Assembly (NCBI RefSeq): GCF_031769215.1
Contig: NW_026781898.1
Location: forward strand, 310,001 to 374,000
Origin: Ylistrum balloti
Taxonomy: Eukaryota
Length of the DNA stretch: 64,000 bases
Direction of reading: 5' to 3'
Below are positions 5,448-62,947 of this stretch, one piece after another. The notes under the pieces were generated by a model, which was given only the letters and a program-made list of their open reading frames with translations, made no database searches and was not told the origin of the DNA. The position numbers and the translations under genes were made by a program. Each line of letters opens with the position of its first letter. The stretch's first letter is position 1.

Positions 5448-7592
5448 ATGATCTACTGTTTTGACGACTTTCAGTTAAAACATCTTTGCGATGTCATTGA
5501 AGCTGAGCGCCGGGTCCGAGAAAGGCTTTACAACGAACTGACATGGACAAATGCTTGGTCACCAGGGGGTCGTACTCGGGGTCACAGACCCAGCTCTGGT
5601 AAGAGTCAAAAACAGGCACTGAAGAAACGACCATCATCTGCCCGGAAATACGATGATAGATGCGACTCTGATACATCACGTGACGAAGAATCTCTCGTGA
5701 AATATCGGCCAAGTTCCGCAAGACTTTCACGTGAGAAGGTTAAAGATGTTTCACGACGGAAGCCAAAATCTAATGTTTTGGAAAGTAGGTCTGAAGCATC
5801 GTATGAAGAGCGTCCACGTCTGAAAGACCGACCTCACTCTGCAAGGGAGTCCCGTGAAAAGGTGAAGGATACCGTGAAAAGAAAACCAAGGACACTTGCA
5901 TTCGAAATTGGATCCGAGTCAAAGTCTGTAGCTGTAAAATGGGGTTCAGACCCCCGGAATCTCTCAGTGACTATGGGAGACGGATATGGGAGAAAATCGC
6001 GAGCATCGAAAAATCCGGAACCGGAACATGACAAGTTTGTTATCAGTAACTTTGGAAAAGGGAGCTCATTCAGTGTGGATACAGGAAGAACATCAAAGGA
6101 CCCTACCAACATAACTATTGACAATGTTCGAAGGGGCTCATCCGCTCCTAAGGAAACACTTCGCGTGACCGGAGGAGGCACAAACGTCGTTATTCATAAT
6201 CCAAAAAGACCAGGTCTGCCCAGTAGAGGATCGAATACCATTCATGTAGCAAGCGGAAATTCCGATGTAGTAGTTCACAAACCACACAACCAGGACAGTG
6301 ATTCTAATCAAAGTGACATAATTCGTAAAGAAAGAAAGCCAAAGAGTTCTCTCAAAAAGATAAAGGACACAAGCAGCGATGTTTCTCAGAGATACAGTGT
6401 TATCAAATTTTCTGAAGACACGGGAACCCAAACGGCATGGATGGATACAGACCCAGATCAACAGCCTAATTCCAGTTCCGGTCCTCCTTCCCGGCGTATT
6501 AAATTCATGGGTGAGGATCGAACGCACCGGGAGTATAAAACCGCCTTCGTTGATGACCAGAAACTCGTCCGACCTATGACAGATGATGATATTCCACTCG
6601 TGGTAGAAGTCGTGCAACCTGATGAAGACGACCACGATGATGTAGATGAATACTCGGTACAAGAAAACGACCACAGACCGGAAGTTATACACTATATAGA
6701 TAAAACAGTGCCTGCTAGAGCTATCGAACCGTTCGAGCCAGTATTTATTCAGCCACATCCGGTATGGGAGGTAAGCATTTTTTTCACGAATCGACAGAGG
6801 AGTTTTGGGACATCAGTGCTTATGATATACTTATTTATACCTTAAAGTTATGCAACTACCCGGTTATCACTTTTAAAACATGTATAGGATTTAAAAATAA
6901 GTTTCCGTTTCATATGAAATTTTATGAAACGAGTTTTTAATTTTGTGTGAGCCTCGGGGAACTTCACTGGATAACAGGCGAATTATGTCCTATATCCAGT
7001 AGTATACGTGTATAATGACACTAAGAGGAGCTATGATTGGGTTAAGGTTTCCATTATTAATAAACAAAATCTTACATTCGATTCCATTCCTTGTAAGATG
7101 TATCAAACTAGTCACGAAAATTTCACTGTTATCAGTAAAATGGAATTTGATGAAGAGATATCCTGAAACTCTGATGTTGTCCATATTTCATCGATCAATT
7201 GTACTTCGGAACATTTGATTTTGGGAATTCTAGTTTGAATACATGGCGACTGTGTAACCACAGGTCGAAATTCTATGAATCAGATTAGTTGAGAAATGTC
7301 TTTGTTACATTCTAAATATCTATCAGGGACTGTTTATCCATAGTGTTCGTAACATCCTGGGCTTTTTTTCTAGCCGGAGATCAGAGAAAAACGCCCTGTC
7401 ACTCCGAAGAAGGTGATATCCCGACCGCCCCTCCCCCCGCGTCAGTACCGGCCCCTGGATGTGTATGACCGGAGGAGTGCTGATACCAATGACCGATTCT
7501 TGGTAGTTAAGACTCGGGCTCCGCCGAAGAAACCACCACGCCCACTAATTCACTACCACCAACATGATGACGCTGTTTTCTCTGTGTACTAA
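5448..7592 (+). CDS. Cluster gene G1: exons 5448-6770 and 7374-7592, about 513 aa, disordered Arg/Ser-rich protein with a GAS2-tail-like terminal motif
   Basis: Long ORF with aaaATG at 5448, donor GAG|gtaagc at 6771 and acceptor ttttttctag|CCG at 7373 (phase 0). Exon 2 reads PEIREKRP...RPLDVYDRRSADTNDRFLVVKTR...SVY*, which aligns with the G6 exon-2 motif PVKVYEHKRRTSVDDKFLFIKSR. AATAAA is at 8091. Confidence 0.8.
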
Positions 7593-8136
7593 TGAAAAAC
7601 GTTGCTTTCTCTGTGTAATAGGAAATGGTGTAGACTTCTCTGTGTACATACAAGGAATGATACAATTTCCTCAAACTCACCATTCTCAGCATAAGTTTAC
7701 GGTATAAACAAATGTACTACTTAGTTCTATGTATCTATTGTATCAAAATTGGTTTCTGGGCCGGAATATATCCATAGCAAACGTGAAATTATCTCATTTT
7801 CTTTAGTAATGAGACTTGTCTTATTCAATTTATCGACTAATGTACCATGTAGGTCAGACTAGACAAGATGTCGGAATCCACATACCTGTATTCACAGATT
7901 GGAGCGTATTTAGATATTTAACATGCACACATGTGTTGAACGCATGTAGCTGATGGAGAAATGAAAACGGGACTGAATCCTTTTCTGTTGGAAAAAATGG
8001 GCCAATTTTCATTTCATGTAGAATTATACTGTTCATCGTCCGTTTAAAAGCGACAGAATCAACACAGGACTGATTTTATACAACAAGAATAATAAAGATA
8101 TTATCACTGACTGCTTTATTCCAGAAAGTAGAAGTA

Positions 8137-9303
8137 ATACATAAACTTATATACAACATAAACTTATATACAACATAAACTTATATACAACATAAACTTA
8201 TATACAACATAAACTTATATACAACATGAAACTGATATACAACATAAAACTTATATACAACATAAACTTATATACAACATGAAACTGATATACAACATAA
8301 ACTGATATACAACATAAAACTTATATACAACATAAACTTATATACAACATAAAACTGATATACAACATAAACTGATATACAACATAAACTTATATACAAC
8401 ATAAACTTATATACAACATGAAACTGATATACAACATAAACTATATACAACATAAACTTATATACAACATGAAACTGATATACAACATAAACTATATACA
8501 ACATAAACTGTATATACAACATAAACTGATATACAACATAAAACTGTTATACAACATAAACTGATATACAACATAAAACTTATATACAACATAAACTTAT
8601 ATACAACATAAAACTTATATACAACATAAACTTATATACAACATAAACTTATATACAACATAAAAATTATATACAACATAAACTTATATACAACATAAAC
8701 TTATGTACAACATAAAACTTATATACAACATAAACTTATATACAACATAATACTTATATACAACATAAACTTATATACAACATGAAACTGATATACAACA
8801 TAAACTTATATATACAACATAAACGTATATACAACATAAACTTATATACAACATAAACTGATATACAACATAAAACTGTTATACAACATAAAACTGATAT
8901 ACAACATAAACTTATATACAACATAAACTTATATACAACATAAAACTGTTATACAACATAAACTTATATACAACATAAACTGTTATACAACATAAACTGA
9001 TATACAACATAAAACTTATATACAACATAAACTGATATACAACATAAACTGATATACAACATAAACTTATATACAACATAAACTGATATACAACATAAAC
9101 TTATATACAACATAAACTGATATACAACATAAACTGATATACAACATAAAACTTATATACAACATAAACGTATATACAACATAAACTTATATACAACATA
9201 AACTGATATACAACATAAACTTATATACAACATAAACTGATATACAACATAAACTGATATACAACATAAAACTGTTATACAACATAAAACTGTTATACAA
9301 CAT
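8137..9303. repeat. Minisatellite, ~17-bp unit AAACTTATATACAACAT (roughly 65-70 copies)
   Basis: Directly visible tandem array with 16-19-bp variants; it contains very little G on the + strand. Confidence 0.97.
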
Positions 9304-10134
9304 ATGCAATTAGTGGCATGCTTACAACTATTTTAGTACTACGAGATAAATATGTATGTTATTTTTACTGTATCGGTACCCTTGTTTCTAGTTGGTGTTG
9401 GGAACTCTTTGAAAAGACAAGGGTCCCTGTTGTTGTCCCCTTTTAAGGGTTAAAATCGGTTCCCGCTAAATTCGTACAAGGATATTTATAGAAGATATAC
9501 AGAGAGTGTAAAACATAGATAGTTGTTAGTATTGAATAAGTTGTTTATTATCTACAGACACCGCCAATAAAAAAACATTCTGAAGATACCAAATGTCGAC
9601 AGTAAATATGTAGCAATGTATCCCCATGGCTTTGACATTCATGGTTTTTGTAACTGATTCATTATCACTTTATATACGAAACGTTAAAGAGTAATGAAAA
9701 AAAAACTGATATAGAGAAAATTTAGAAACATTCAGGGACGACGAAATCCCGGAAAAAGCTTTCGATTTTGAACGCGTTCAACCTCAGGTTGTTTCATACG
9801 CAGTTTTATTATTATCATTATTTGTAAACTATAAAGCTGGAAATATACCAAACAAACTAGAAAACCTAACACTATATAACATGATAAGTATTATGTCATT
9901 GAATATGTTCAATTAAACAAGAAATGCTGTACTTAGAATGATTTCTGAGTTTGTCTTTGTTTAGTAGGATTCTGCATTCTGTGTGAGACAAAGTAGTCAT
10001 TTAATCAACACTTCGTGTAAAATACTAATTTCCACCTATGTTTGTCAACCTCAATCCAATGACGTCACACCGACAGGATGTTGTGGAATGAATGCTGAGC
10101 AATGCCGACAAGATGTGTGTTGTTAACTGGAAGA

Positions 10135-10982
10135 TGTGTGTCGCTAAGGGTCGGAATCCCATGGTTTGTAGACAAAATGTGTGTCGCTGAGGGTCGGAAT
10201 CCCATGGTTTGTAGACAGAATGTGTGTCGCTGAGGGTCGGAATCCCATGGTTTGTAGACAAAATGTGTGTCTCTGAGGGTCGGAATCTCGATGTTTGTTG
10301 ACAAAATGTGTGTCACTGAGAGTCGGAATCCCGAGGTTTGTAGACAAAATATGTGTCGCTGAGGGTCGGAATCTCGAGGTTTGTAGACAAAATGTGTGTC
10401 GTGAGGGTCGGAATCCCGAGGATTGTAGACAAACTGTGTCGCTGAGGGTCGGAATCTCGAGGTTTGTAGACAAAATGTGTGTCGCTGAGGGTCGGAATCT
10501 CGAGGTTTGTAGACAAACTGTGTGTCGCTGAGGGTCGGAATCTCGAGGTTTGTAGACAAACTGTGTGTCGCTGAGGGTCGGAATCTCGAGGTTTGTAGAC
10601 AAAATGTGTGTCGCTGAGGGTCGGAATCTCGAGGTTTGTAGACAAACAGTGTGTCGCTGAGGGTCGGAATCTCGAGGTTTGAAGACAAACTGTGTGTCGC
10701 TGAGGGTCGGAATCCCGAGGTTTGTAGACAAACTGTGCGTCGCTGAGGGTCGGAATCTCGAGGTTTGTAGACAAAATGTGTGTCGCTGAGGGTCGAAATC
10801 CCGAGGTTTGTAGACAAAATGTGTGTCGCCGAGGGTCGGAATCTCGAGGTTTGTAGACAAACTGTGTGTCGCTGAGGGTCGAAATCTCGAGGTTTGTAGA
10901 CAAAATGTGTGTCGCTGAGGGTCGAAATCCCGAGGTTTGTAGATAAAATGTGTGTCGCTGAGGGTCGGAATCCCATGGTTTG
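10135..10982. repeat. Minisatellite, 43-bp CpG-rich unit gtgtgtcgctgagggtcggaatctcgaggtttgtagacaaaat (~20 copies)
   Basis: Directly visible tandem array. It explains the overlapping repetitive ORFs at 10025-11029. Confidence 0.97.
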
Positions 10983-13900: not shown

Positions 13901-14318
13901 CGGATTGTCATTTACCTACCCACAGGTGAAGTAGTCAATTACGGTATAGGTGAGGGCATACACAGGTGCGTATATTGTGTACATCCGTCACTTGTTTGTG
14001 CTACACGGAACGTTTATAGAATCTCACGTTTTAAACCATATGGGTCATTAGTGGAATGTACAATGTATTATATATATACGTAGAAGCTTAGGTTGATAGC
14101 TGTATAAGGTCTCCCTGCTGGTTTAAATCATAGGAACTGTTAAGTATTATTGGACAACGAGATATACTTGGACAACAGGTGTGATATATATGTTTGCACG
14201 CGTGTTGGATTGTCTACCTGGTCAGTTTAAGGTGAATGTTTAAAACTAACAACCTCGGTCTGTAGTGGTTTGATACCGGCCGGACATGAGTTACAAGTGT
14301 TAACTATCTGGTAACATA

Positions 14319-15783
14319 ATGGTACAAGGAAACAGTTCGCCAAAACGTGTCATGTCGGCAAGTCGGCGGAAAAATCCGTCTCAGCTAGCCGAATCGGAGG
14401 CTAAAGAAACACCGCGACAGGCACGTGTCAAGAAATCGACTTCTAAATTTGAAAGAGGCGTACAAAATATGTTGGAAACGTCGGAGACGTTGGTTTCTGG
14501 GGAAAAGTCTGAAAAGAAATCGAGCAAAAACTCGAGAAAAAGTGAATATTCTAATGAAAAGCGTATAGTTAATTTAAAAGATGTGAAAAATTCTAGTGTA
14601 AAGGAAAATATCATTGGAAATGATAAACTTACTAGTTCCCCTAAACTTATAGCTAGTAGAGATTTACGGAAGGCGAGCATAGGGTCGCATGACAGTATGA
14701 GTTATCGCCCCTTGAGACCTGTTTCCGGTCCCAGTGACCGTCTCGTGAGACCTGGATCCGAGGATAGCGTAAGTTCGACAATCAGACAAGAAAGAGAAAG
14801 ACTGTCTTCCCGTAAGGACAGTTCTTACTCGACCTACATTGAGATTACCCATAATGCATCAGAGGACCTCATAGTGGTAGAAAACGCCGATTCCGATTGG
14901 TCTAACAGTGATGACCTTATTCCTGAAGTTGAGGAAGTCGATCTTCAAAAGTCAAAACCAAGTGCAAAACCGGAAGTTGATGAAAAAAAGACAGAGAAAG
15001 AATCAAATCGACGAAGAAAACGCCGACCAAGGACAAGGAAAAAGAAAGAGAAGCTAGGACGCAGGTCAAAATCAGCAAATGACGGGGACGAATTTAAAGC
15101 CCGTGCAGACCACGTGATTGTAACGGACTTGGAACATATTACACAGGAAGTTCCTGCTGAACCTGTCTATGTACCACACGATATATGGGTCGTAAGTACT
15201 CATTAAGTTACAGTTTTTACAGTAATATGTCTAAGATCAGCATGTTCAGAAAATTTGTGTTGTTGCTTCTCTATAAAAGTGTCATCTTTTAAAGTAAAAA
15301 TCTATTTTGTATAAGAAGTAAATAGTTTTTCCTTTAGAATTATTTTCTGTTTCTAAGCCCAAATTTACCATCCGTGCGTCTAGCGCAAAGTTGTTACTAG
15401 CAACAGGTGCCTCTCTATCTTGCTTACATGTCCTAATATGTATCAATCTTATTGCAAATGTTCCGATGTTATTTAGATTCCGCAACGTATAAAATTTCAT
15501 ATTAATAGTATACATATCTCTTCACTAGCCCAAACGACGCATGCGCGAGAAAGGCAAGCAGACGATGGTGCGTGTAGGAGGAGGTTTCATGGACTTGTCC
15601 TACTATTTACATCATCATGTACCAATAAAGGTTTATCAGCCAAAGCCGTACGCCCAGCTCTTCAACAAGCACATGTTTATGGTCAAGTCTAAACGTCCAG
15701 AATTAGCTACTGGCCATAAACACTATGATCGTCCAAGTTGGACGACCATGAACAAAGGATTCAAGGCCTTCGCCTGTATATAA
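14319..15783 (+). CDS. Cluster gene G2: exons 14319-15191 and 15529-15783, about 375 aa, disordered protein with a truncated GAR (GAS2-related) motif
   Basis: ataATGG with an in-frame stop just upstream, donor GTC|gtaagt at 15192 and acceptor cttcactag|CCC at 15528 (phase 0). Exon 2 contains TMVRVGGGFMDLSYYLHHHVP, resembling the GAR C-terminus VMVRVGGGWxxLxxYLxxHDP. Confidence 0.85.
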
Positions 15784-18057: not shown

Positions 18058-18760
18058 CGACTATACATATCAATCGGTAAACATGCCACAGTCTTGACTA
18101 TACATGTCAATCGGTAAACATGCCACAACCTTGATATACATTTCAATCGGTAAACATGCCAGAGCCTTGAATGTACATGTCAATCGGTAAACATGCCACA
18201 ACCTTGACTATACATATCAATCGGTAAACATGCCACAGCCTTGACTATACATGCCACAGCCTTGACTATACATGTCAATCGGTAAACATGCCACAGCCTT
18301 GACTATACATGCCACAGCCTAGACTATACATGTCAATCGGTAAACATGCCACAGCCTTGACTATACATGTCAATCGGTAAACATGCCACAGCCTTGACTA
18401 TACATGTCAATCGGTAAACATGCCACAACCTTGATATACATATCAATCGGTAAACATGCCACAGCCTTGACTATACATGTCAATCGGTAAACATGCTACA
18501 GCCTTGACTATACATGTCAATCGGTAAACATGCCACAGCCTTGACTATACATATCAATCGGTAAACATGCCACAGCCTTGACTATACATGCCACAGCCTT
18601 GACTATACATGTCAATCGGTAAACTTGCCACAGCCTTGACTATACATGTCAATCGGTAAACATGCCACAGCCTTGACTATACATGTCAATCGGTAAACAT
18701 GCCACAGCCTTGACTATACATGTCATTCGGTAAATATGCCACAACCTTGATATACATATC
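18058..18760. repeat. Minisatellite, 37-bp unit gactatacatgtcaatcggtaaacatgccacagcctt with 21-bp deletion variants
   Basis: Directly visible tandem array. Confidence 0.96.
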
Positions 18761-19596
18761 AACAAGTCATAATGAGGTTTCATGCCGGAATTTTTAAAGG
18801 GAAAGTAAGGAAAACTATTCAAGGCTATTTACTCCAGTAGAATTTGTTACAAATCATTTCCTTTCCAAACTATTTCACGCACGTAATCACATAATATACT
18901 GTAATGATGAAATGATTGATCAAATTAGTTTTCAAATTGCATTATCAACTGTGCTGATATGTGTTATGATGACAATACTGTCCTAGCGCTTTTATTCAGA
19001 AATTGTTTTTCTTTACGTAAAAATGAGTACAAATGAGTTTTCACATCTGTATTTTGGTTATAGAATTTTTTCTACATAGTATGAGCAATGTCCATGTTGT
19101 GAAAGGCGAATATCAATCTTCCGGACTTCCACAAGAAAGACTTTAAAACCAGTTTTGATCAAAGGGGAACAACTCAGTCTAGATTCTGTATAAAATCTAG
19201 ATTACAGAATCACGAAACTTGATGAATTATGGGGATAGTGCTACTTCATATGCGTATCTATATTTCAATATTTTGTTCGATCTGTTTAAACTTTCCTCAA
19301 CAGCCTCCAAGAATCAGCTGTATGTTGCAGTCTAATTCATTATTTGGCTTTAATGTATCTAGTTCTAAATTAACAATGAAATGTGATTTCTATTGTGTTT
19401 TTTTACAATCTTCTCGATATTGTTCTTTATGACGCGTATTCCTTGGGTATTTAAGGCTGCATACCCGAAGACTGGTGGTAAGTTTATGTCGAAATGTAGC
19501 AGTGACCCATAAGATAGGTCTAGCACAGTCTAAACCATGTAAGCACCCTGGTTCATCCCCGCCAAAGAAGGCAAATATGGTTCCATCAGCTGGAAA

Positions 19597-21441: not shown

Positions 21442-22329
21442 ATGGCTAGTGAGTTTTTCGCGAGGAAGTTAAATCTAGAGCTAGCTTTGAACCCGCTTTT
21501 CCATGGCCCACACGAGGAGTTAAGGGAGGAAACTCCCCCACCAAGGGAGGTCAAGGTCACTATAAAAAAGGATTTTACACAGAGAAATTATGGCAGCCAT
21601 AGCACCAGGAGTCAGTGGAAACTCAGCACCGAAAGTAATATAAACAGTTTTGAATTTAAGCATCGAAACCCAAAAGGTGTATACGACTTTCTTAAAGTAA
21701 AAATAGAACGCGAGAATGCCAGGAGTAAACGTGCTAAAATTAAAAAATCCACAGGCAAAGTTAAAAAGGTGGACGAGACAGAAAACGGAAATGGTGTTGA
21801 AAAGGAAGCACGTGAAGTCATTGTAGAAGCAGAATCAAATCCTCGTGAAACTGATAAAAATGGTGCTGAATCAGAAAATAACAACGACAAACAGTCAACA
21901 ACAAATAAACTGCCAGAAACCGGAAGTGAGAAGAGTGGAGTGGTACCAGAAATACTACATTATTCGGACGAGTTCACAGAGGGTCCGCTGGAGGTGTACG
22001 AACCTGTATTTGTGCGGTTTCCTGTGTGGAAGGTAACATAATTTGCTTTGAAAATTTGTGTTGTTTTAAAAAGTGGAATCTTTTCCGGATCTTTATGTAT
22101 GCGTCCCCTTTTTATTTGACTTAATCTACGATATAAAATTCCAGACAACGATAGCTTTGTTCTGAAATTTAACAACATTATAAATGAAATTGATAGTAAT
22201 AGCTTTTTTCCTATTTTCAATGTTTTATTAGGATACGTGTGTATTTGTATGATAATGGTCAGCTTCTGCTTCTTACAATACATTATATATTTTATTCTCT
22301 TTCAGCCAGCTAAACTTAATCACGACTGA
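21442..22329 (+). CDS. Cluster gene G3: exons 21442-22032 and 22306-22329, about 204 aa; the terminal exon is reduced to PAKLNHD*
   Basis: gaaATGG start, donor AAG|gtaaca at 22033 and a strong acceptor ttttattctctttcag|CCA at 22305. The exon-1 end EILHYSD...PLEVYEPVFVRFPVWK matches G1 (EVIHYID...AIEPFEPVFIQPHPVWE). The exon-2 assignment is less certain. Confidence 0.7.
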
Positions 22330-24850: not shown

Positions 24851-24857
24851 TAAATTA

Positions 24858-27251: not shown

Positions 27252-28460
27252 ATGGCCACCATTGAGTGTTGGCAACCTTATACGTCTCTAGATCAACTAC
27301 TAACCTCCTCGCTAGTGCTGACGGATGGGGAGGAGGAGGTGGAGCACGTGAAACAAGAACTTCCCAGGTCTACCCGACGGGCAATTAAGTTCATACGTAA
27401 TCAGAAACTCCGCCCAAAACCTGGATTTCGACGACGGGAAACATGGCTTGAGAACCAGCTCTCATTATCAGCAGGAATTGACATTCTATATCACGATCAG
27501 GTGAAGAAAGACAATCGTGGGACTTTGCAGAGTCAATCTTCCCATTCACCAAGATCCTCCGAAGAACACAAAAACCGATGGATTGGGTTGGATTTATTAT
27601 TAGACCCAGGCATTCAGAATTCTTCCAAAAAACCGTCCAGGACACAACCGTCTAAGACTGTTGTTTACAAAAGGAAGAATTTAGATACACCTGTGTATCA
27701 TTTAAAACAACCCTTTGAACCTATCCCAGTATACGAACAGAGAAATGGAATAGGAAAGCGTAAAAGTAGAAGTCCTAGACATAGCAACACGATTAAACGC
27801 CTCGAAGACACAGATAGAAGCAAGAGTTTGGAAGACATTGATAAAAGTGAGAGTGTGCGTGATGGTTCTAAAGGAAACAACACAGGGAGCATCTCAAAAC
27901 CAAAAACCTACACCGAAATTCTTCATTACGTAGATGGGGCGACGTCTATGGGTGTCATCGATACGTTTGAACCTATCTATGTTATAAGCAGGAAAACAAA
28001 GGTATGTACACACAGACAGTGAAATGTTTTATATGTAATGCTTTACTGTAATCTGTAAACTTACGTCACAATGAACGGTGACGTCATAATTTAGTTTTAT
28101 AAAGGTCATATGTAATTGAAATAGTTTGAGTCTAATTCATTTTCTTTGTCAATTTTTCTTTTCTGTTCCAAATTTTCAAAAACTACCTCTCTTTATTTCC
28201 GGTTTTATTCTGTTTTTTATCCAAAATTAGTTTATTATGTGAATTAATTACGTACAGTGACTATTTACATTTTAGCAAACAAATGTAAGTTCATGCATGT
28301 CTTGTTTAGTTTCAACTATTATTATTTAATAGAAGGTACGTATGACATTGCCTTGGCGGTCATTTTTGTTTTCCATTAGGAGTTCAGCGTGTGCTCCTCC
28401 GATATAGAATCGTTAGGACTTGATACTTACCACAGTGACGTCACCAGTCAAGGTCACTGA
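27252..28460 (+). CDS. Cluster gene G4: exons 27252-28001 and probably 28380-28460, about 276 aa; no GAR motif
   Basis: acaATGG start, donor AAG|gtatgt at 28002 and acceptor tttttgttttccattag|GAG at 28379, giving EFSVCSSDIESLGLDTYHSDVTSQGH*. The exon-1 end EILHYVD...IDTFEPIYV matches G1 and G3. Confidence 0.7.
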
Positions 28461-32246: not shown

Positions 32247-33743
32247 ATGAGGTTGTGTGAAGAGCTGAAACAATGGAAATTGTGTTTGCCGAACCAACCG
32301 TATATGTTACCAAACATGCCTAAAAAGAGGTGTCGGCGTCGAGTTAGGCGGAAACGGAAACCACCGGAACCACCCGAGAAAGTCATTGTCACTGTAAGTG
32401 ATGCAGGCACGCGGAAAGTTGCCGTGCAACGAGTGGTCCCAAAACGTGAAAAACAAGACTCGAGGAGGCTGAGAACAGAAGAAGGAGAAGGAGAAGAAAA
32501 TGGAACTGAAAAAAATCGTTCTCACAACATGTCTACACAAACTACATTTCATGACCTTGAGTTCCTCCTCACAGATCCCCGGATTCAGGAGACGAGGTCT
32601 AGGAGGGAAATGCTACCAGGCGAGGTGATCTACACCCGTAATACCGCTGCCCAGCGAACATACCGCACTGGAGACACAACTCTAAAAGTGGAACATCTGT
32701 CTACAGACAATATTGTCGTCCAAATTGACACGAACACCCCAGCGCGCGGACGATCGGATAATGGAAAAGTACGAGGAGATGGTCGAGAAAACCATGAAAA
32801 CGGACGCAAGGACATCGAGTGTGGAAAAAACGAAGAAAAGGATGAAGGAAAGATGAATGAAGAAAAAGACAAAAGAGACAAATCTAATGGTAAACAAACT
32901 ACATTTTCAAACGAAGCTGTCGAGATAATCACAGAAAAGACAGAGAGTACAACGAAGGTTCGCCCACCCAGCAAGGTAAGGAATTTACAACATTCCGTAC
33001 CTTATATACATTAAGCTTCATCGATTTCAAAATTAGCTTGGATTAAATATCAGTGTATTAAATACCACCAAAGTCGGTGACCAAATCATATAGGTATTAC
33101 TGATAAACATCGAGCTGGAATGGTACTTAATAACTCTATCGGGAACGCCATAGATAATGTATTTTCTAAAATCTGAAATTTTTTATGTTTGTGATCTGTC
33201 TTACCGTTATATTGTTATATTTAGTTATATTGTTTGTGGTTCTATCTATCATCTATTTATTATATAAACATTAACAACAACACCAATTACGAAATAATTT
33301 CTGTATGTGGTGATTTGAAGTAAAGAAAAAAGCAAACGATGGTGATAATTCTGTTAAAAGCGGTATTGTTATACTGTGGACGAATATTGTAAAGTTGTAA
33401 ACAAATTGGATTGAAATATAGAAATTGTACAAGTCCTTGTGTATATACTATCTGAACCTTTTGACACGTGTTTCAGGTGGCTAAAGCGTGCGGACATAGG
33501 CTACCTATGGTTCGCGTAGGAGGAGGGTGGATGGAAGTCCCAGATTATCTTCGTTTCCACGTGCCGATGCACGTGCATGTCGAAAATACAAAAGATGGAC
33601 AGGAAGGAAATGTGATAATAAGGTCACAGCGACCAAGGTCACAACTGTTCTCAAAGAAAGGAGAAAGTCCAAGCTGGACGGCCACATTAAGTAGAGGCAC
33701 AAAAGGGAGCGCTTCAACGACAATGAGACAAAGACTTGTATAG
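32247..33743 (+). CDS. Cluster gene G5: exons 32247-32975 and 33477-33743, about 331 aa, disordered protein with a truncated GAR motif
   Basis: First ATG is aagATG at 32247 (the ORF is open from about 32205). Donor AAG|gtaagg at 32976 and acceptor tgtttcag|GTG at 33476 (phase 0). Exon 2 contains PMVRVGGGWMEVPDYLRFHVP. Confidence 0.82.
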
Positions 33744-37350: not shown

Positions 37351-37403
37351 CTAACCTCACTCTAACCTCACATAACCTCACTCTAACCTCACTCTAACCT
37401 CAC
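37351..37403. repeat. Short tandem repeat, ~11-bp unit ctaacctcact (~5 copies)
   Basis: Directly visible. Confidence 0.85.
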
Positions 37404-38499: not shown

Positions 38500-40053
38500 A
38501 TGTCTCTTCGAGAACATCGCGCTTCCTCGTCAAGGAGATCTCGGAAACGTGAAAAGGAGAGTGTGTCAGATGAATCCGGTGATGAAGGTCGTGTTTTAAT
38601 AAGGCGACGCCCTGCGTCGGCAAGTGATCTTCGACTGCCTGAATATCGTCATTACTCAGGCGATGATAAAACTCAAAAAAGGTTTTACAGGAAGGAGAAA
38701 AAGCTCACACGGGGCACCCAAGAGGAACGCACACTGGAATATGTCATGAGCAGTGGACAGCAAGAACAGCGCCGTCCTGTGACGAGGACGGCATATCAGA
38801 GTGACGGCGAGGAGATATATGATAGTGAGACCGGAAGTGAAAGTACCATCCGGCGCGTGAAGGAGCACATGCGTTACTATGCAACACAAAATACCCGAGC
38901 TGCGTCGGATATGGGCGACAGAGGCATCGTGTACTACAACGCGCGCAACCACGGCCGTGCGATGTCCGATGTCGGCACACAACTCGTGCAGCATGTGCAA
39001 CAGGACAGTATGCGAGAACACGGACGTGTTGGCAGGCCTGGGTCGGCATTCAGTCAACAGGTCATGCAGACAAGAGATGGTGACCGTCTTGTAGAGGTGG
39101 AAACAAGAGAGGAAGGCAACAAGATATATTATAACTACCGTCTAAAAGCGGAACCAAAGCCTCCTCCGGCCCCTGTAAGACATATGCGCCACGTGGGAGT
39201 ACAGATGACCACCAAATACGTTGCTGAGCAATCACCACCGGTCAAAACTAGGAATAGTGGCACGCAGACTACAGCCCCACCTCCGAAACCAAAACCCAAA
39301 CCTCAAAGACAGATATTAGTAGCTCGTCCTGAAACACCCCCTCCGCCACTTGAGGTTATGGAACCTGTACCTGCGGTGGTAAGTAGCCATAATAATAATT
39401 TCTGTGTCCTTTTTTTATGTTTTTATTGTGGTCATATCGCGAGTAAAGTTATTGACAAAAATGTATTATTTCTCTTATTTCCGAATCCAAATTTTGAAAT
39501 TAATAATCCTTTAATTATAGGTCCTATAGCATTCACAACTGTAAGAATAAGTTACAAATATCACTTACTGGTCTAACTCTTATGATCCGTATACAGGAAT
39601 TTAACTTTACTGACTCTTTGGCACGAAACAAATCCCGTGGTTTAGGAGTCTTAACCAACTAACATCTACGTTACTTCAAATTACTGCGAAACAACTCTCT
39701 TCATGCTAGTCACATACATTCGGAACAGATGATTCCCACCAATAATTCGGATAAAAACAATGTTTGTTCAAACCCAGTGATACAAATCCGTGTACATTAC
39801 CTTTTATATACTTGTATGTTTTATTTACTTTCAGATTCCCAAGGCCAAGTCGGTGATGGTACGTGTGGGAGGAGGTTGGATGAAAGTGGAGCATCACCGT
39901 AACCACCATATACCTGTCAAAGTTTACGAACATAAACGACGCACAAGCGTAGACGACAAGTTCCTTTTTATTAAGTCCCGGTTTGCTCGGAAGAAGAAAC
40001 AAGTACCCATAGCTTATAAAATGTATAGAGAAAAATTGGTGCTGGATAATTAG
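38500..40053 (+). CDS. Cluster gene G6: exons 38500-39378 and 39835-40053, about 365 aa, disordered protein with a truncated GAR motif
   Basis: gaaATG start, donor GTG|gtaagt at 39379 and acceptor ttatttactttcag|ATT at 39834 (phase 0). Exon 2 reads IPKAKSVMVRVGGGWMKVEHHRNHHIPVKVYEHKRRTSVDDKFLFIKSR. Confidence 0.88.
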
Positions 40054-42843
40054 TGCATTTCCATGTTAGGCTGTATTATTCAAATTAGAGCTTGTAGTCT
40101 TGCTCAATTATGATTCTGATAAACGCTTGATATTAACTTCCATTGGTCAGAAAAGGCCGTTCGGCTTTAGAATATTTTTGTATACATTTGTACTAACCAA
40201 CAATGATATTAACTACTGAAGTAAGGTTATTTTATCTCATTCATTCGGTTATGGTGTCTCGTATTCATAGTGTCAGGTCCCTATGTGATACCTACCTCGT
40301 CATTATAATGACAAGCCCCTGTGTAATGAAGCAAACATTTTAATATTCCCATGTAATAATGCTTCAAATACGCGAGGTGCTGTACCCAAGATGTACGTTT
40401 ATTTATTTTTTTTTCACTTTGCACTTTTTATCAGAATCATTTCGTTATACTGTAGTCATCTTTAAACCTTCCTCCGTGACTACAATGGAACCTCGTTTTC
40501 ATTTTTATCTGTCATGATGTCAATGGAAATCTATTTTTTCTGAAGGCTTAATTTTGATCAGAAAACATTTTATTCCTTTTTGAAGATTTTACCAGCCAAA
40601 AGAGGTTCCGTTGTATGTTACTTTACTTTAACCAAAATTTAACATGAAATAGATAGAATACTCATTTTCAATCTGAGTATGATTCAAGCCGTAGATATTA
40701 ATTTTGTTAATTATATAATTACAATGTATGTCGATTCTGTTCGTGCAATCAGCCATGTAGTAAATAAATAACAAGCAGTAGCGCGTAGTCTCGTTCGTCA
40801 GTTTCCGGCAGCTCCGCCAAACGACTTTATCCGGATATCTTCGGTCCTTCCCGGTGAGCACGTGAAAGGCCCGAAGATTCTGGAAAAGACGAATTGAACG
40901 GGATTATGAGTTATTTTGTAAATTGGGGACATTAAAGATTAAGTAATGTTTACATCGTTATATGGCAGTAACATATGTTGTTAGCCCAGTTTCGTGTTAA
41001 TTAAAATAATTGACAATCACCAAGTTTCTGACGTTTATTTCTATATATACTCCACGCTTAACACCCGCTTTAGCTTCCAAATGCCATTTCACATCACGCC
41101 ATGAAATTTGAATAATTGATTGTTGTTACTTGTTCTGTACTGTTGTTGTCATGTTATATATTTTTTACTTTTTTTCAAACGCCATCAGCAACTCCTCACT
41201 GAGTTAGATCTAATGAAAGTCATGGCGTTGCCCTTCCTGACACTGATAACGATGAGTTACAACTCAATCTTGATACCTTATTTTAATCCGTGATATTGAA
41301 CAAGCACCAGTTAATTAAATTGTAATGAGTCAAGCTTAAGAGAATCAGTTCAATTTTACATGACACCAGTAATACATGTATTAGGTAACAATCATACAAA
41401 GCCATTTCTAGCAATCACTACTGTCTATTGAAAAGTAATTTTAAGACAGAAATGGTTAAGATAGAACGTTCTTCCTTCAGCAGAAATGCAAGCCTACCCA
41501 GAGTCAGATGATACGTTGATAAACGTCGAAGGGTTTTGTAAAACTTCCTCGTACATAGCAAATATCTGTTATCAACTTTTTGAAAAGTAATTAGAGATGG
41601 AAAAAAATTATATACCCCCGTAACAATACCTATGGGTATCCTTGTTCTTTTTACTGGGACAGTCCTGCTGAAAACGGTCGGAGATTTGCCGAAAACGGCC
41701 GGAGATGTTGTAAACATTGTCGGAAAAACCCGAGTGATTCCTGGATTATATGTTTGAATATCACCAGCGATCGATATCGGTTAATAACGTGTACTTTGAT
41801 CGGGTTTGTGGATGATGTAACAAATACGCAATTGTATTTTTATAATCTCCTCACTATTCAAAGGCTGTTAATACACGCAGTACTCCTCCATTTGATGAGT
41901 GTTGTCAAGGCGACACAGCAACTGTACATATAATTACCATCAAAAAGAAATGTATTTGCTACTTCAAAACGGAGGTTTAAAAGATTGTAAACATGTCTCG
42001 TGAAGAAACCCTGTTAAACAGGTTTTCAATAATCACCGAATTATTCTAATCGTGTTATATATTAATAGATTTCATCAACAATATAACCTTTCTGGGGAGG
42101 AATGATTTGAATAGAAATGTGCTTGTAATGTTCAAATATTAATGAATCCGTTTTCCCAAAGGAATTCATCAAACGCGATATTGCGACGCGATATATGCTA
42201 AGGGTATTGAATGTCATCGAATTTTTGTACACAGTATACACGTGTAGGAGTCGTATAGGTGACATCTGACGCTTACATCTTCAGGGCACTGTATATATAA
42301 AATATAAATATCATTGTAGGGTGCTTACCATGTAATTATCTGTATACACTTACAACAAGGGACACTCTCGGATTTTACTTGGCTGTTTCCATTGACGTTA
42401 ATCCAAATTTAGCCTAAGTCGTTATGGAATGGCAAGTCTTAAAAGGACACGGTGGCCGAGTAATATAATATACGTAGGTGACAGCCCTGTACGAACCTTG
42501 TAGACCGATGTGTATACGGGTGGCAAGCAAACAAGGCATTAGGGAGGACTGGAAAACACTTAACCAAATATTGAACATTTCTCATTTGAAATACATACGT
42601 CAACACATAGGAGAAACATACCTTAGTGACGACCGAGTTTGACAACTGGATATCAATTTGTATCACAAATACGATTGGTTGTTGAAACCGAGAATACTTT
42701 AGTATATAGAAAGCCCATCGGTTTCAAGATTTCAAGGGATACGCTGAAAGTGTGCCATGAAAAAGACATGATGCATCGAATGAAGTGATTATTTTCGAAA
42801 GATTCTCTTGGATTAATACCATTCATAAGCAACATTTGACAAA

Positions 42844-45800
42844 ATGTCTCGCAGTGGACATAGGCGTGTATCCAGACAAAGTAGTATCCGGTCACAAAAC
42901 AGGAACCACTATTATTCAGACGCTTTCACAGACGATGACCGTCGTTACGTCGTTCGTGATGACGTCATGACTGACAAAGCGGCATGGGTGGAGGATTACG
43001 TGTATGGTCGGTCTAGAGGGAGCACGCGCCGACCCCAGTCTGCAATGCTGACCAGGACTGGGGGATATCGGCCTCAGTCCCCGGGACTCGTTGAAGTTGG
43101 GCGATATGAAAAAGATGGGAAAATTTACTGTGATTATCGAATGTCAGACGAAAATTATTCGGAGCCGGTTATTATCAAGCGATTGCCCGCTCCCCCACCA
43201 AAGGTCAAAGTTCGGAATGTCGGGGTACAGATGACCACGAATTATACCGTCCCACCCCCTAGAAAAGTTCCCACCAGGGACGCCTATACTCAGACCCGAG
43301 TGTCCACGCGCCAAGCCTACACACAGAGTAGGCCCTTGAAGACCCCCAAACCGAAGGAATCATCACCTATCGTGGTAATCCCACCCCCTTCTCCACCACG
43401 GACTCCATCACCCCCACCCCCTAAAGTGGAGGTAAGTTGATACCCCCATAACTAGTACTGTCAACGTGCAGTTGGTATTTAAACCTAATATATATCAAAA
43501 TCTGCAGACGTTGCTTAGATTTCGTTATTTTAACAATGAACATGTCGCGAGTAGATCGGGGAGGTTGGGAAAACTGCGGAAAGACGTATGATTTTGTTTA
43601 CTTTTTTATTTTATTTATCATAATAATAGTGCGGGGAGGGGGAGCGTTGCAGTCTCTAGATTTTAAATGCCCCCGGTATATGTTTACTTACAACATGCTA
43701 TGATGTATGACTTGTCATGATGAAGTGATACCTGTATCCAGGTGACTTTGATAAGTGATCCGTGTCGTCACACAGCTATGCCGTTATTGATAAAACATCA
43801 ATAAATCCGGGTTACAGAGGCTGATACGGAAAGGTATTATACAAATACTTGTCGACAAGCCAGTTCGTCAATCAATACTTCTCGGTCTGAATTAACCACA
43901 CGAAATGTGAAAATCGTTGCTGACATGCCAGTAATGTTTGGAATGTTTGATATTTCGTCCACGTTATTTACCTGTGAACATGTATTTTTAAAAAATAATT
44001 CTGCATCCGTTCCGCACGAGATTAAATCTGTATATAAAACAGGTATATATGTAACCTCTAAATTCATATGATTAACATAGGAAATGACACGCGTATAAAT
44101 ATTTAGTGCTCTCTCTCCGATCCTACAATAATTAGGTCTCATAACAATTCAGAATTATCTATTCGGTATCTATATTGCATCATCTTCCTATATAATTGCT
44201 GGTTGATGCTTACAACCCATCACTAGTTGCTACATTTGACCAAATATTGCTTTTGTATTCGACCAATGGTAAGCTTCTGCTCTAGAGCTGCTTATATTCA
44301 GGGACTAGATTGGGGACGTGTTACAGAACGTACCAGGCAGGGGCCTTTATTGAGATCATATTCAGATCTGTTGTAAGTAGTACTGTAATGATAGCCTGAC
44401 TGGAAGAAGACAGATTATAATTGTAAAGCTGAAACAAACGTCAGGAAAGTATATTATCGAAACTGATTCACAGTGACGATCGTTCGATCTGTGAAGCCTG
44501 TAGCGATGACAGTGAACATGGTTACAAGCCGTTCACTCTGGCCCCTGTGGTTGGCACGTTTTAGGTTTTAGGTGGAACTCAAGTGTTAAAAACTGAAATC
44601 TATATATTTGCAGTGACAACATTTGAAATAAGAGGTCACCGCTAAAGGTAATTTCAATCGATAATAGACCGTGGAACTCTTGTTCATGTATTTGTTTTAA
44701 CATGTGGATTTTAAATACAAGTAATTGTCAAAGATTGTCAATGAATATTTGACATTCAAATCTACACCTTAAGTATACAAGTTATCTATTACGAATATTG
44801 AGGGCATAATGAAATATGGGCAATTTGGATTAAAATTTTTCGAATCACTTTTTCAACGGAGCACTCAGAGCCACTGTATCATTATTCTTGACGCAAGTTT
44901 TCCTATTACACAGGTTATTTCACAATAATTCGGCGAGTTGTAACATGCCAGATGAAACATCGTATAAAAGACCTTTACAAACTGGTGAATTGGCCCCTTT
45001 GTACTTGTTGGTGTTCCGTTTTTAACACACGAACTTGTTCATTAGGTACATGACTTCAATTACTTGCATTCAATATATATGGTCACATTTTATTTATATA
45101 TTTGAACTGTTTCACCAACCTCTTAGGGAACAGTGTGTTTTACCTGATGGTTGATTGAGATGAATCGATTTATTGAGAGAAGATAATGATCTATTGTTGG
45201 AGATTGTTTAGGTTTACTACAGCATAGATTCAATCTATGGATAAATCCTAACTGATTTTGATGTAATATTCAAACGGAAATCTTTATGAAATACACAGCT
45301 AACCTTTCGTGACTGGCAATCATCACCTACATTGTGCTTATTTAAAGGCAGTAGTGTTTGATATAACTATGTTATTATTGTTCATATCAAGGTATTGTGA
45401 GAGTATTGATTGTTGGATTGTTGGAGTCAGTGTTATAAGAATATAAGCAGAAAAGAGCTATTGGTAAGCCGCCATATTTCTTGTGAACAGCAGTATGTTC
45501 ACGACAGATCAACACAACAAGCAAAGGTCAAAACGTAAATAAGTTCTTTACACTTTCTCGACTGGATCACATAGTATTTATATACGCGAGTAAATCTTCT
45601 TTTTATTGAAAATGAAACGTGTGTGAAGCTGGTGATGTAATATTGAGCTCTGAATTTCAATATTAAGAGTGTTCCTTGAGAAAAATAAATACAGATCGTA
45701 TAGCACGGTATTAAAGTATAATCTGCTTATAGCATATATACCAAGAACCGGTTTACAAAAAGCATTATTAGTATATATAATGTTCGTGGGCACAAACCTT

Positions 45801-46573
45801 GAAATTTTCATTTTTTCCTATTGATCTTGAAAAAGGAAATGCTCGATGCCTGGTTAATATCGATTAAATGTAAATATTGTACACGTAAATTAAGTTTTCA
45901 TTCATACAAGAAGCAATGTTGTCATTCTAAACTCAAAAAGCAAATAAACATGCTCTGAATATTGAGCAGAACTTAAAGTACAACCTTTTAAACGGTTTGT
46001 AAAAGAGTTAACTCCCTTTATTTTACCCACCACTAAAGAATGTCGCGTTATACTAGACATAGAGGAACATGAGACTTAACGTTTATCCAAAATACTATTT
46101 GTAATAAAACGTTTCAGCCTCCAAAGGCATCATGCATATCACTGTGTCGACGACAAGTAGGGTCCTGCTTTAGTAAAATTTACCTGCCCTTAGTACTATT
46201 TCTCTCCACTACCTGGCACTTTACGAAAATAAAACTGCTATACGTTCATGTCCATATAAAATCATGTTTAATCCTGATTGATCTTTTGCAGGAACCACAG
46301 TACATCTATGTGCCCAAGACTCGTCCGAAGCCGATCGTCGTCCGAACGGAACACACCGGACGTCCAGGCTACCTGGTTTCAGAGAGTAGAAAATCCTTGA
46401 CCAAGACCGTACCACTCAGGGTCATTGAATATGATAATAATAGAAGTCTGAAAGACAAGTATATGTACGTTCGGCCAAGTAGTGCGATCGGACGCAGCAA
46501 ACGAGTATTTTTGCCTTTGGGATACGAAATGTACATGGAACGACCATTTAAAATACCTGACTATCCAAGATGA
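42844..46573 (+). CDS. Cluster gene G7: exons 42844-43431 and 46292-46573, about 289 aa, closest paralog of G6
   Basis: aaaATG start, donor GAG|gtaagt at 43432 and acceptor atcttttgcag|GAA at 46291 (phase 0). It shares with G6 KIYCDYR/KIYYNYR, RNVGVQMTTNY/RHVGVQMTTKY, VPLRVIEY..KDKYMYVR/IPVKVYEH..DDKFLFIK and PLGYEMY/PIAYKMY. Confidence 0.8.
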
Positions 46574-62796: not shown

Positions 62797-62947
62797 CATG
62801 AAACCTCACAAGACACTCTAGTCTACCCTGAAACCTCACAAGACACTCTAGTCTACCCTGAAACCTCACAAGACACTCTAGTCTACCCTGAAACCTCACA
62901 AGACACTCTAGTCTATCCTGAAACCTCACAAGACACTCTAGTCTACC
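62797..62947. repeat. 30-bp tandem repeat tgaaacctcacaagacactctagtctaccc (5 copies)
   Basis: Directly visible. Confidence 0.95.

What the first reader, a model, noticed from the sequence alone, without database searches (positions are those of the whole stretch)
5448..46573. Tandem array of seven divergent two-exon genes forming an apparently unannotated family
Seven + strand units spaced 4-9 kb apart share one architecture: an ATG with a purine at -3, a 590-1320-nt disordered coding exon, a single phase-0 GT-AG intron and a short terminal exon. Overall similarity is low, so pipelines would call them unrelated low-complexity proteins. A network of short shared motifs on both sides of the intron nevertheless links all seven. 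The motif set (partial GAR, LC8-type sites, RPxS sites) points to microtubule, ciliary or sperm-flagellar roles; that functional reading is inference. This is the best candidate for an undescribed system in the window.
Basis: partly seen in the sequence, partly recalled or inferred. Interest (0 to 1): 0.9.

Follow-up and report, generated by a model that had tools for sequence, protein, structure and literature searches.

The report
Scallop gene array with GAS2-derived tails
Seven neighbouring two-exon scallop genes are a real, conserved family of mostly disordered proteins; most end in a small module copied from the last exon of the cytoskeletal linker GAS2, and five are already annotated as uncharacterised proteins.

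Summary
The window is Ylistrum balloti contig JAUZWB010000739.1, bases 300001-364000. All seven + strand units exist at the stated coordinates, each with one phase-0 GT-AG intron.

Five units (1, 2, 3, 5, 6) match recorded gene calls exactly. Units 4 and 7 are not on record for Ylistrum but are annotated in other scallops. All seven are collinear in Pecten maximus and under strong purifying selection (omega 0.08-0.22 in exon 1, 0.03-0.11 in five terminal exons).

The units are related, in two blocks:
- Units 2, 5, 6 and 7 are linked by the terminal exon.
- Units 1, 3 and 4 are linked by the motif at the end of exon 1.
- Units 1 and 2 bridge the two blocks only weakly.

The terminal exon matches only the last third of the Pfam GAS2 (GAR) domain plus a tail also seen in GAS2-like last exons. 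AlphaFold2 predicts a small beta-beta-alpha-beta-beta module.

A profile search of 1.84 billion proteins gave only 23 hits. One is an ark-clam gene with the same structure and a tandem neighbour.

TQT (LC8-type) and RPxS motifs are enriched and conserved. A cytoskeletal adaptor role is inferred, and a ciliary or sperm role has no support. Annotated isoforms in three other scallops splice across units.

The parts
5448..6770 (+). Unit 1 exon 1 (441 aa). It carries RPxSA x3, TGTQTA, then EVIHY.D and EPFEPVFI..VW at its end.
   Evidence: It equals the first 441 aa of LOC132552843 (P0006). omega = 0.08 against Pecten.
7374..7592 (+). Unit 1 terminal exon (72 aa). The MVRVGGGW strand has degenerated; PLDVY...NDRFLVVKTR is kept.
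   Evidence: Recorded gene call 5448-7592, 513 aa. omega = 0.08.
14319..15191 (+). Unit 2 exon 1 (291 aa), ending in EPVYVPHDIW.
   Evidence: LOC132552820 (P0011, 375 aa). omega = 0.20.
15529..15783 (+). Unit 2 terminal exon (84 aa) with MVRVGGGFMDL..YL.HHVPIKVY...NKHMFMVKSKR.
   Evidence: Pfam GAS2 25.7 bits, profile positions 42-68 of 69. omega = 0.03. AF2 module with pLDDT up to 87.
21442..22032 (+). Unit 3 exon 1 (197 aa), ending in PEILHYSDE...LEVYEPVFVRFPVWK.
   Evidence: LOC132552742 (P0012, 204 aa). omega = 0.15.
22306..22329 (+). Unit 3 terminal exon (7 aa, PAKLNHD). It may be a truncated remnant of the family's PK.K start.
   Evidence: Logan ORF P0018 reads across the junction as ...VWK|PAKLDHS with no intron.
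27252..28001 (+). Unit 4 exon 1 (250 aa) with LDLLLDPGIQ, then TEILHYVDG...DTFEPIYV.
   Evidence: No Ylistrum protein was found for it. Orthologues are P0013, P0014 and P0015. omega = 0.10.
28380..28460 (+). Unit 4's own terminal exon (26 aa), unrelated to the GAS2-type exon.
   Evidence: Conserved in Mizuhopecten model P0013 and intact with an AG acceptor in Pecten.
32247..32975 (+). Unit 5 exon 1 (243 aa) with MSTQTT and LEFLLTDPRIQ.
   Evidence: Recorded gene call 32247-33743, 331 aa. 59% identical to Pecten, omega = 0.22.
33477..33743 (+). Unit 5 terminal exon (88 aa) with MVRVGGGWMEVPDYLRFHVP.
   Evidence: Pfam GAS2 23.0 bits, positions 47-67 of 69. 94% identical to Pecten, omega = 0.03.
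38500..39378 (+). Unit 6 exon 1 (293 aa) with RRRPASAS, VGVQMTTKY, RNSGTQT, a proline-rich stretch and LEVMEPVPAV.
   Evidence: LOC132552832 = P0001 (365 aa). omega = 0.11.
39835..40053 (+). Unit 6 terminal exon (72 aa). This is the archetype: MVRVGGGWMKVEHHRNHHIPVKVYE...DDKFLFIKSRF..KK..P.AYK.YRE.
   Evidence: Pfam GAS2 26.7 bits. Top PDB sequence hits are the MACF1 and GAS2 GAR domains. AF2 pLDDT 72.
42844..43431 (+). Unit 7 exon 1 (196 aa), paralogue of unit 6 (VGVQMTTNY, YTQT, RRPQSA).
   Evidence: hhalign 6-7 gives 7e-17. Not among the gene calls in L001. The Pecten orthologue is P0024 (282 aa). omega = 0.08.
46292..46573 (+). Unit 7 terminal exon (93 aa). It starts with EPQYIYVPKTRPK, has a degenerate GAR strand, and carries KDKYMYVRPS. 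In other scallops it is also used as a 3' exon by upstream units.
   Evidence: Mizuhopecten P0004 and P0005 and Pecten LOC117326876 end in this exon.
41891..42843 (+). Conserved non-coding block directly upstream of the unit 7 ATG. Similar blocks lie at 5226-5447, 13629-14318, 26889-27251 and 31857-32246. They are probably each unit's own promoter and 5' UTR.
   Evidence: blastn against Pecten gives 69-83% identity with no shared ORF, whereas introns and intergenic DNA do not align.

Best explanation
This is a conserved tandem array of seven paralogous two-exon genes of a bivalve-restricted family that has not been characterised.

Exon 1 encodes a basic, Ser/Arg/Lys/Pro-rich region that is mostly disordered. 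It carries conserved short linear motifs:
- repeated RPxS[A/E] sites,
- G[TV]Q[TM]T motifs of the LC8 (dynein light chain) type,
- EILHY.D,
- EP.EP[VI][FY]V.

In units 1, 2, 5, 6 and 7 the terminal exon encodes a module of about 55 residues. It is homologous to the last exon of GAS2-like genes: the last strand and helix of the GAR microtubule-binding domain, plus the C-terminal tail. In units 1 and 7 the GAR strand has degenerated. Units 3 and 4 have short, different terminal exons.

Shown here: the gene models, collinear orthology, purifying selection, the partial GAS2 match, and the family's narrow range.

Inferred: the proteins work as cytoskeletal adaptors. The GAS2-type module would give self-association and/or contact with microtubules or GAS2, as the equivalent parts do in GAS2. 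The TQT sites would recruit LC8 dimers to pair the disordered chains. The RPxS sites would be regulated by kinases that prefer basic residues.
For: Gene models
- They equal the recorded products of 513, 375, 204, 331 and 365 aa.
- All seven are collinear in Pecten maximus LR736842.1.

Selection
- dN/dS is 0.08-0.22 for exon 1 and 0.03-0.11 for five terminal exons, at dS of about 1.
- Only exons and blocks just upstream of the ATGs align between the two species.

Kinship between units
- hhalign: 6-7 7e-17; 2-5 9e-11; 2-6 2e-9; 5-6 1e-7; 1-3, 1-4 and 3-4 about 5e-5.

GAS2 link
- Pfam GAS2 matches above the gathering score, but only profile positions 42-68 of 69.
- The best PDB sequence hits are the GAS2 and MACF1 GAR domains.
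- GAS2-like last-exon fragments P0037 and P0039 score 43-47 bits on Pfam GAS2. They also carry the VYE...DKFLVIKSRY tail.
- Their homologous part begins 7 codons before MVRV, after what reads like a translated polypyrimidine tract and acceptor. The family's phase-0 intron lies at the same spot.

Fold
- AF2 predicts the same beta-beta-alpha-beta-beta module for u6 and u2, with block pLDDT up to 83-87.

GAS2 function (PMC12084551)
- beta3-beta5 and alpha2 of the GAR domain bind microtubules.
- Residues 277-314 are needed for dimerisation and bundling.

Range
- Only 23 hits at E<=1e-3 in 1.84e9 representative proteins.
- Tegillarca granosa P0027 has the same phase-0 two-exon structure and a tandem neighbour.
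- That neighbour's mRNA, from a related clam, is an intronless contig.

Motifs
- TQT occurs in 4 of 7 units (shuffle P = 0.0004); RPxS occurs 13 times against 1.7 expected.
- Both are conserved in orthologues.
- The u1 and u6 sites fit the LC8 preferences: Gly at -2 and an H-bonding residue at -4 (PMC6607443).
Against: - No expression, localisation or binding data could be reached, so every functional step is inferred.
- The module lacks about two thirds of the GAR domain and the DPC residues that end GAS2's GAR domain. It cannot be a normal GAR fold.
- Foldseek found no match for the model in the PDB or in Swiss-Prot AlphaFold models, not even GAS2.
- The link between {1,3,4} and {2,5,6,7} rests on weak scores (2e-3 and 0.017), plus position and gene structure.
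- Many TQT peptides do not bind LC8 (PMC6607443).
- That P0037, P0039 and P0040 belong to full CH+GAR genes could not be checked. They are not on record in the gene-position index.
Confidence: 0.6

Rival explanations
1. The array is one complex locus rather than seven independent genes. Several promoter-bearing first exons would be spliced to alternative downstream terminal exons. Because every intron is phase 0, every combination stays in frame. Unit 7's terminal exon would act as a shared 3' exon.
For: - Mizuhopecten isoforms P0004 and P0005 join u6 exon 1, part of the u6 terminal exon and the u7 terminal exon.
- Pecten LOC117326876 runs from u4 exon 1 to the end of the u7 terminal exon. Its recorded 327 aa equals u4 exon 1 plus the u7 terminal exon in frame.
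- Argopecten P0015 is similar.
- All seven introns are phase 0.
Against: - Each unit has its own conserved terminal exon under purifying selection.
- Each has a polyA signal 0.5-0.9 kb past its stop.
- Each has its own conserved upstream block.
- Pecten isoform X2 (P0014) reads the u7 exon out of frame through a 26-nt mini-exon, which looks like read-through noise.
- The internal donors needed in Ylistrum u6 are weak: aaa|GTGGAG and aaa|GTTTAC.
- These isoforms are automatic models.
Confidence: 0.2
2. The family is specifically ciliary or sperm-flagellar (axonemal).
For: LC8 is a dynein and axoneme component, and the GAR remnant points to microtubules. Atlas feature neighbours of u1 include the SPATA6 and CIMIP4/TEX33 clusters, but at scores of 0.64-0.73, below the tool's noise level.
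Against: - There is no strict X-box (RFX) site in the window. The loose matches lie at least 900 nt upstream of any ATG and are no denser near the units than elsewhere.
- No promoter word is shared across units and species beyond the null.
- LC8 has more than 100 partners unrelated to dynein (PMC6607443).
- No tissue data could be reached.
Confidence: 0.12
3. The units are not one family. Two unrelated sets of low-complexity genes ({1,3,4} and {2,5,6,7}) happen to lie side by side, and the bridging motifs are chance or convergence.
For: The bridging hhalign scores are weak (1-2: 2e-3; 1-6: 0.017), and the other cross pairs are not significant.
Against: - The gene structure, strand and intron phase are identical.
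- The bridging motifs sit at matching places. EP.[FY]V lies just before the intron or the PK.K start in all units.
- The u1 terminal exon aligns over its whole length with the others.
- The u3 terminal exon starts with PAK, like the family's PK.K.
- The array is conserved as a block in Pecten.
Confidence: 0.08

Closest known systems
GAS2 family (GAS2, GAS2L1-3; Drosophila Pigs) and the GAR domain of spectraplakins (MACF1, dystonin, Shot)
   Same: - The terminal exon carries the MVRVGGGW strand and the following helix of the GAR domain: Pfam PF02187 positions 42-68, and PDB hits 1v5r, 9kbw, 5ve9 and 5x57.
- It also carries a tail (VYE...DKFLxIKSR) that is present after the GAR end in the GAS2-like fragments P0037 and P0039.
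- The predicted tail beta-hairpin parallels the AlphaFold3 beta-hairpin reported for the GAS2 C-terminus (PMC12084551).
   Different: - There is no CH domain, and the first two thirds or so of the GAR domain are missing.
- H-x-P replaces the DPC that ends the GAS2 domain.
- The rest of the protein is a long disordered exon with other motifs.
- The genes have two exons and lie in tandem.
Disordered LC8 (DYNLL) client proteins with closely spaced sites, such as GKAP and ASCIZ
   Same: TQT or variant anchors sit in disordered sequence, often two close together. An example is R.VGVQMTT followed about 15 residues later by RNSGTQT in u6. This pair is conserved from scallops to other bivalves.
   Different: There is no sequence kinship with those clients, and binding is untested. 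The u7 site has a bulky Tyr at -2, which PMC6607443 lists as unfavourable.
Variable-first-exon clusters (protocadherin, UGT1A)
   Same: Several first exons on one strand each have their own conserved upstream block. Annotated isoforms in other scallops join an upstream first exon to the most distal 3' exon.
   Different: Each unit also has its own terminal exon and polyA signal. The shared-exon use is known only from automatic models and is partly out of frame.
SRRM1 (NCBI's automatic name for u6 orthologues)
   Same: Arg/Ser/Pro-rich composition only.
   Different: There is no PWI domain or any other Pfam match apart from the partial GAS2. The name reflects composition.

Membership tests
GAS2 / GAR-domain proteins | A complete GAR (GAS2) domain, Pfam PF02187, about 69 positions | tested here: not met
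   The matches cover only profile positions 42-68 (u2), 47-67 (u5) and 44-68 (u6). u1 and u7 have no match. Exon 1 has no GAS2 match.
GAS2 / GAR-domain proteins | An N-terminal calponin-homology (CH) domain (GAS2 family proper) | tested here: not met
   No Pfam CH match in any exon 1 or in P0006, P0012, P0013, P0025, P0027 or P0031.
GAS2 / GAR-domain proteins | The conserved HDPC end of the domain (linked to zinc binding in MACF1) | tested here: inconclusive
   The alignments show HH[IV]P where GAS2 has KHDPC, so there is no Cys. Which residues bind zinc was not checked here.
GAS2 / GAR-domain proteins | The same last exon: intron position and phase, and a C-terminal tail after the GAR end | tested here: inconclusive
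   P0037 and P0039 score 43-47 bits on GAS2. Their homologous part starts 7 codons before MVRV and they carry the DKFLxIKSR tail. Their loci could not be fetched, so the intron is inferred from the ORF read-through.
LC8 (DYNLL) binding partners | An 8-residue motif anchored by TQT in a disordered region, with favourable flanks | tested here: met
   The sites are u1 DTGTQTA, u5 NMSTQTT, u6 NSGTQTT and u7 DAYTQTR. They are enriched against shuffles and conserved. The criteria are from PMC6607443. The test is at sequence level only.
LC8 (DYNLL) binding partners | Physical binding to the LC8 dimer | not testable with these tools
   This needs ITC or a pull-down.
Variable/constant exon clusters | Alternative first exons spliced to shared downstream exon(s) | tested here: inconclusive
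   Cross-unit isoforms are annotated in Mizuhopecten, Pecten and Argopecten. No transcript data are available for Ylistrum, and every unit keeps its own terminal exon.
SRRM1 | PWI domain | tested here: not met
   No Pfam hit in u6 exon 1 at E<=1 other than a chance-level DUF5397 match (0.037, 14 bits, below its cut-off), and no PWI.

The most novel reading that the evidence does not exclude
The array is a combinatorial locus. Because all introns are phase 0, any of seven promoter-specific disordered 'heads' could be joined to any downstream GAS2-type 'tail' exon. That would give a tissue-tuned set of cytoskeletal adaptors, a protocadherin- or UGT1A-like logic applied to a module derived from GAS2. 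The cross-unit isoforms annotated in three scallop species would be the visible part of it.
Probability: 0.15. Interest if true: 0.65.

Novelty: new variant of a known kind. Interest (0 to 1): 0.45.

Why it matters
The array shows how the last exon of a cytoskeletal cross-linker (GAS2) can be detached and fused to new disordered first exons. In bivalves the result has expanded into a tandem family and has stayed under strong constraint.

The 55-residue module isolates the two parts of GAS2 that recent work ties to microtubule contact and to dimerisation and bundling. It is therefore a natural minimal construct for testing what those parts do on their own.

The family also gives a name and a model to a set of 'uncharacterized' and mis-named 'SRRM1-like' mollusc genes. 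It is not a new kind of system, and no function has been shown.

Tried and rejected
- **Pfam on all first exons:** nothing meaningful.
- **Rfam on the window:** no match.
- **Foldseek** of the terminal-module model against the PDB and Swiss-Prot AlphaFold models: no match with E below 1, and GAS2 was not recovered.
- **AF2 of the unit 2 C-terminal 140 aa:** the motifs at the end of exon 1 do not pack onto the module (pLDDT 55-69). The idea that they supply the missing part of the GAR domain is therefore rejected.
- **Promoter checks:** the X-box (RFX) scan and the search for promoter words shared across units and species gave nothing beyond the null.
- **Conserved blocks upstream of the ATGs:** checked for ORFs shared with Pecten; none found, so they are non-coding.
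- **ESM Atlas feature searches for u1 and P0025:** scores were below the tool's noise level.
- **The listing of cluster members:** switched off, so the source species of P0025/P0026, P0028-P0031 and P0037-P0040 are unknown.
- **The look-up of encoding contigs:** no record for P0005, P0014, P0026, P0037 or P0040.
- **Literature:** searches for the LOC identifiers, for 'VRVGGGW' and for SRR27896752 found nothing.
- **The search of earlier findings:** nothing.
- **From memory only:** vertebrate GAS2 ends in an '...NYLVVSASYK...' tail that resembles DKFLFIKSR. No tool gave me a full-length GAS2 sequence, so this is a lead and not evidence.
Full report
**1. The observation**

The window has no N. 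Seven + strand ORFs of 196-441 codons start at 5448, 14319, 21442, 27252, 32247, 38500 and 42844. Each has A at -3. Each ends at a phase-0 GT donor.

Each is followed, 273-2860 nt later, by an AG acceptor and a short in-frame terminal exon of 7-93 codons.

**2. Where the window comes from, and annotation**

Exon 1 of unit 6 finds a 365-aa protein at 100% identity: 'uncharacterized protein LOC132552832 [Ylistrum balloti]'. It is encoded on GCA_031769215.1 contig JAUZWB010000739.1 at 338500-360053 including flanks, so the window is bases 300001-364000 of that contig.

The gene calls recorded around it and around unit 2 have these ranges and product lengths:
- 5448-7592, 513 aa
- 14319-15783, 375 aa
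- 21442-22329, 204 aa
- 32247-33743, 331 aa
- 38500-40053, 365 aa

These are exactly my spliced models of units 1, 2, 3, 5 and 6. Unit 7 is not among the calls in L001, and no Ylistrum protein was found for unit 4.

The family is therefore not 'unannotated'. It is annotated as uncharacterised proteins. The unit 6 orthologues of Argopecten and Mizuhopecten are named 'serine/arginine repetitive matrix protein 1-like'.

**3. Orthologues and selection**

Three overlapping Pecten maximus loci (LR736842.1, 3.329-3.385 Mb) hold all seven units in the same order and on the same strand.

- Amino-acid identity is 59-85% for exon 1 and 79-94% for the terminal exons (the 7-codon u3 exon gave no tblastn hit).
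- Nei-Gojobori dN/dS is 0.08-0.22 for exon 1 and 0.03-0.11 for the terminal exons of u1, u2, u5, u6 and u7.
- dS is about 1, so the ratios are rough but far below 1.
- The 26-codon terminal exon of u4 is conserved in Mizuhopecten (P0013) and intact in Pecten.

At the DNA level only the exons and blocks of 200-950 nt just upstream of the ATGs align between the two species. Those blocks hold no shared ORF. Each unit therefore probably has its own promoter and 5' UTR.

**4. Are the seven related?**

I compared per-unit orthologue alignments with hhalign.

| Pair | P value | Region |
|---|---|---|
| 6-7 | 7e-17 | exon 1 and terminal exon |
| 2-5 | 9e-11 | terminal exon |
| 2-6 | 2e-9 | terminal exon |
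| 5-6 | 1e-7 | terminal exon |
| 1-3 | 3e-5 | EILHY.D...EP.EPVFV..VW at the end of exon 1 |
| 1-4 | 6e-5 | same |
| 3-4 | 6e-5 | same |
| 1-2 | 2e-3 | bridge between the two groups |
| 1-6 | 0.017 | bridge between the two groups |

The bridges are weak, but they are helped by position. An EP.[FY][IV] motif lies just before the intron, or just before the PK.K start of the terminal exon, in every unit. The u1 and u7 terminal exons also align end to end with those of u2, u5 and u6. Units 4 and 5 share L[DE][LF]LL.DP.I[QRKN].

I accept one family, with residual doubt of about 8%.

**5. The terminal exon**

Pfam GAS2 (PF02187) matches u2, u5 and u6 above its gathering score, but only at profile positions 42-68 of 69. 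The best PDB sequence hits are the GAR domains of GAS2 and MACF1, over VMVRVGGGW and the following helix.

Three hits of the profile search (P0037, P0039, P0040) match GAS2 much better (43-47 bits, from profile position 30 or 36). They also carry the family's downstream tail, VYE...[DN]K[FY]L.[IF]KS[RK]Y. In all three the homologous part begins 7 codons before MVRV, after sequence that reads like a translated polypyrimidine tract plus CAG. The family's phase-0 intron lies at the same spot.

I infer that the family's terminal exon is a copy of the last exon of a GAS2-like gene. I could not fetch those loci to prove it.

AlphaFold2 on a 23-row alignment predicts strand-strand-helix-strand-strand (mean pLDDT 72, core 83). 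A second run on the last 140 aa of u2 gives the same module (pLDDT up to 87) and leaves the motifs at the end of exon 1 unstructured. Foldseek found nothing similar.

In GAS2 itself, beta3-beta5 and alpha2 of the GAR domain contact the microtubule. Residues 277-314 are needed for dimerisation and for bundling of both filament types (PMC12084551).

**6. Range of the family**

A profile of twelve terminal exons, searched against 1.84 billion representative proteins, gave only 23 hits at E<=1e-3.

Besides scallop sequences there are longer proteins with the unit 6 layout: RPxSE repeats, VG.QMTT.Y, a TQT-like site, a proline-rich stretch, then the module (P0025/P0026, P0027, P0030, P0031).

P0027 is from Tegillarca granosa (GCA_029721355.1). 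Its gene has a 1494-nt exon 1, a phase-0 GT-AG intron, and a terminal exon that starts 9 codons before MTRVGGGW.

Ten kb downstream lies a second terminal exon. It is almost identical to the C-terminus of P0036, whose 1033-nt Logan contig has no intron. That contig is most simply a spliced mRNA of the neighbouring paralogue in a related ark clam.

Likewise Logan ORF P0018 reads straight across the unit 3 junction. The family, its intron and its tandem habit are therefore at least as old as the split between scallops and ark clams. Whether it exists outside bivalves is unknown.

**7. Short motifs**

TQT occurs once each in u1, u5, u6 and u7. Shuffles give 0.34 in total, P = 0.0004. RPxS occurs 13 times against 1.7 expected, and RPxSA 7 times against 0.07. 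The sites are kept in the orthologues.

The u1 (D-T-G-TQT) and u6 (N-S-G-TQT) sites fit the published LC8 preferences. The u7 site has an unfavourable Tyr at -2 (PMC6607443). That paper also stresses that many TQT peptides do not bind.

**8. Cross-unit isoforms**

- Mizuhopecten isoforms X2 and X3 join u6 exon 1, part of the u6 terminal exon and the u7 terminal exon.
- Pecten LOC117326876 spans from u4 exon 1 to the end of the u7 terminal exon. Its recorded 327 aa equals those two exons joined in frame.
- Its isoform X2, and the Argopecten equivalent, pass through a 26-nt mini-exon and read the u7 exon out of frame.

All introns are phase 0, so such joins stay in frame. Whether they are functional or read-through noise cannot be decided here.

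**9. Verdict**

The partial GAR, the LC8-type sites and the RPxS sites hold. 'Unannotated' does not hold, and the ciliary or sperm role has no support.

The best reading is a bivalve family of disordered cytoskeletal adaptor proteins that end in a module derived from the last exon of GAS2. The function is inferred. This is a new variant of a known kind and of moderate interest.

Noticed in passing
window 8139-9304, 10134-10989, 18059-18762, 23294-24160, 24354-24638, 25092-25995, 46860-47129, 55512-56143, 59215-59485, 62799-62947: The spacers between units are full of minisatellites (17- to 65-bp units, up to 67 copies). The 43-bp and 42-bp arrays create long spurious ORFs in several frames on both strands (10065-11029 and 23267-24443).
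   Followed up: partly
window 20258-20502 and 40995-41089: Two isolated blocks conserved with Pecten (72-74% identity) lie away from any exon, about 1.2 kb upstream of the unit 3 ATG and about 0.9 kb downstream of the unit 6 stop. They could be an enhancer, a 5' UTR exon or the end of a 3' UTR.
   Followed up: no
window 27252-28460 and 42844-46573: Units 4 and 7 have no gene call on record for Ylistrum, although both are conserved, under purifying selection and annotated in other scallops. They are probably gaps in the annotation.
   Followed up: partly
window 5448-6770 (unit 1), also 14319-15191 and 21442-22032: Unit 1 is not simply low-complexity. Its N-terminus and a central run of short strand-like repeats (VISNFGKGSS, TIDNVRRGSS, VVIHNPKRP, IHVASGNSD, VVVHKPHNQ) are almost invariant among scallops. 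Similar [IV]V[IV][EH]N-type words occur in u2 (IVVENADSD) and u3 (VIVEAESNP).
   Followed up: no
L006 (Tegillarca granosa CM056596.1) 6698-7033 and 23604-23813: Next to the ark-clam family gene lie an upstream fragment resembling exon 1 (VG.QMTT motif) and a second terminal exon downstream. The family is therefore tandem there too.
   Followed up: partly
P0027 and P0031 (non-scallop family members): Both carry a dense cysteine cluster in the disordered head (CCCCINICCC and CCGCVDIVVTSCC) that the scallop units lack. It may be a lipidation or metal site.
   Followed up: no
Pecten LR736842.1, about 3364115-3364140 (position 34692-34717 in my merged Pecten sequence): A 26-nt mini-exon downstream of unit 4 is used in Pecten isoform X2, and it shifts the unit 7 terminal exon into another frame.
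   Followed up: partly
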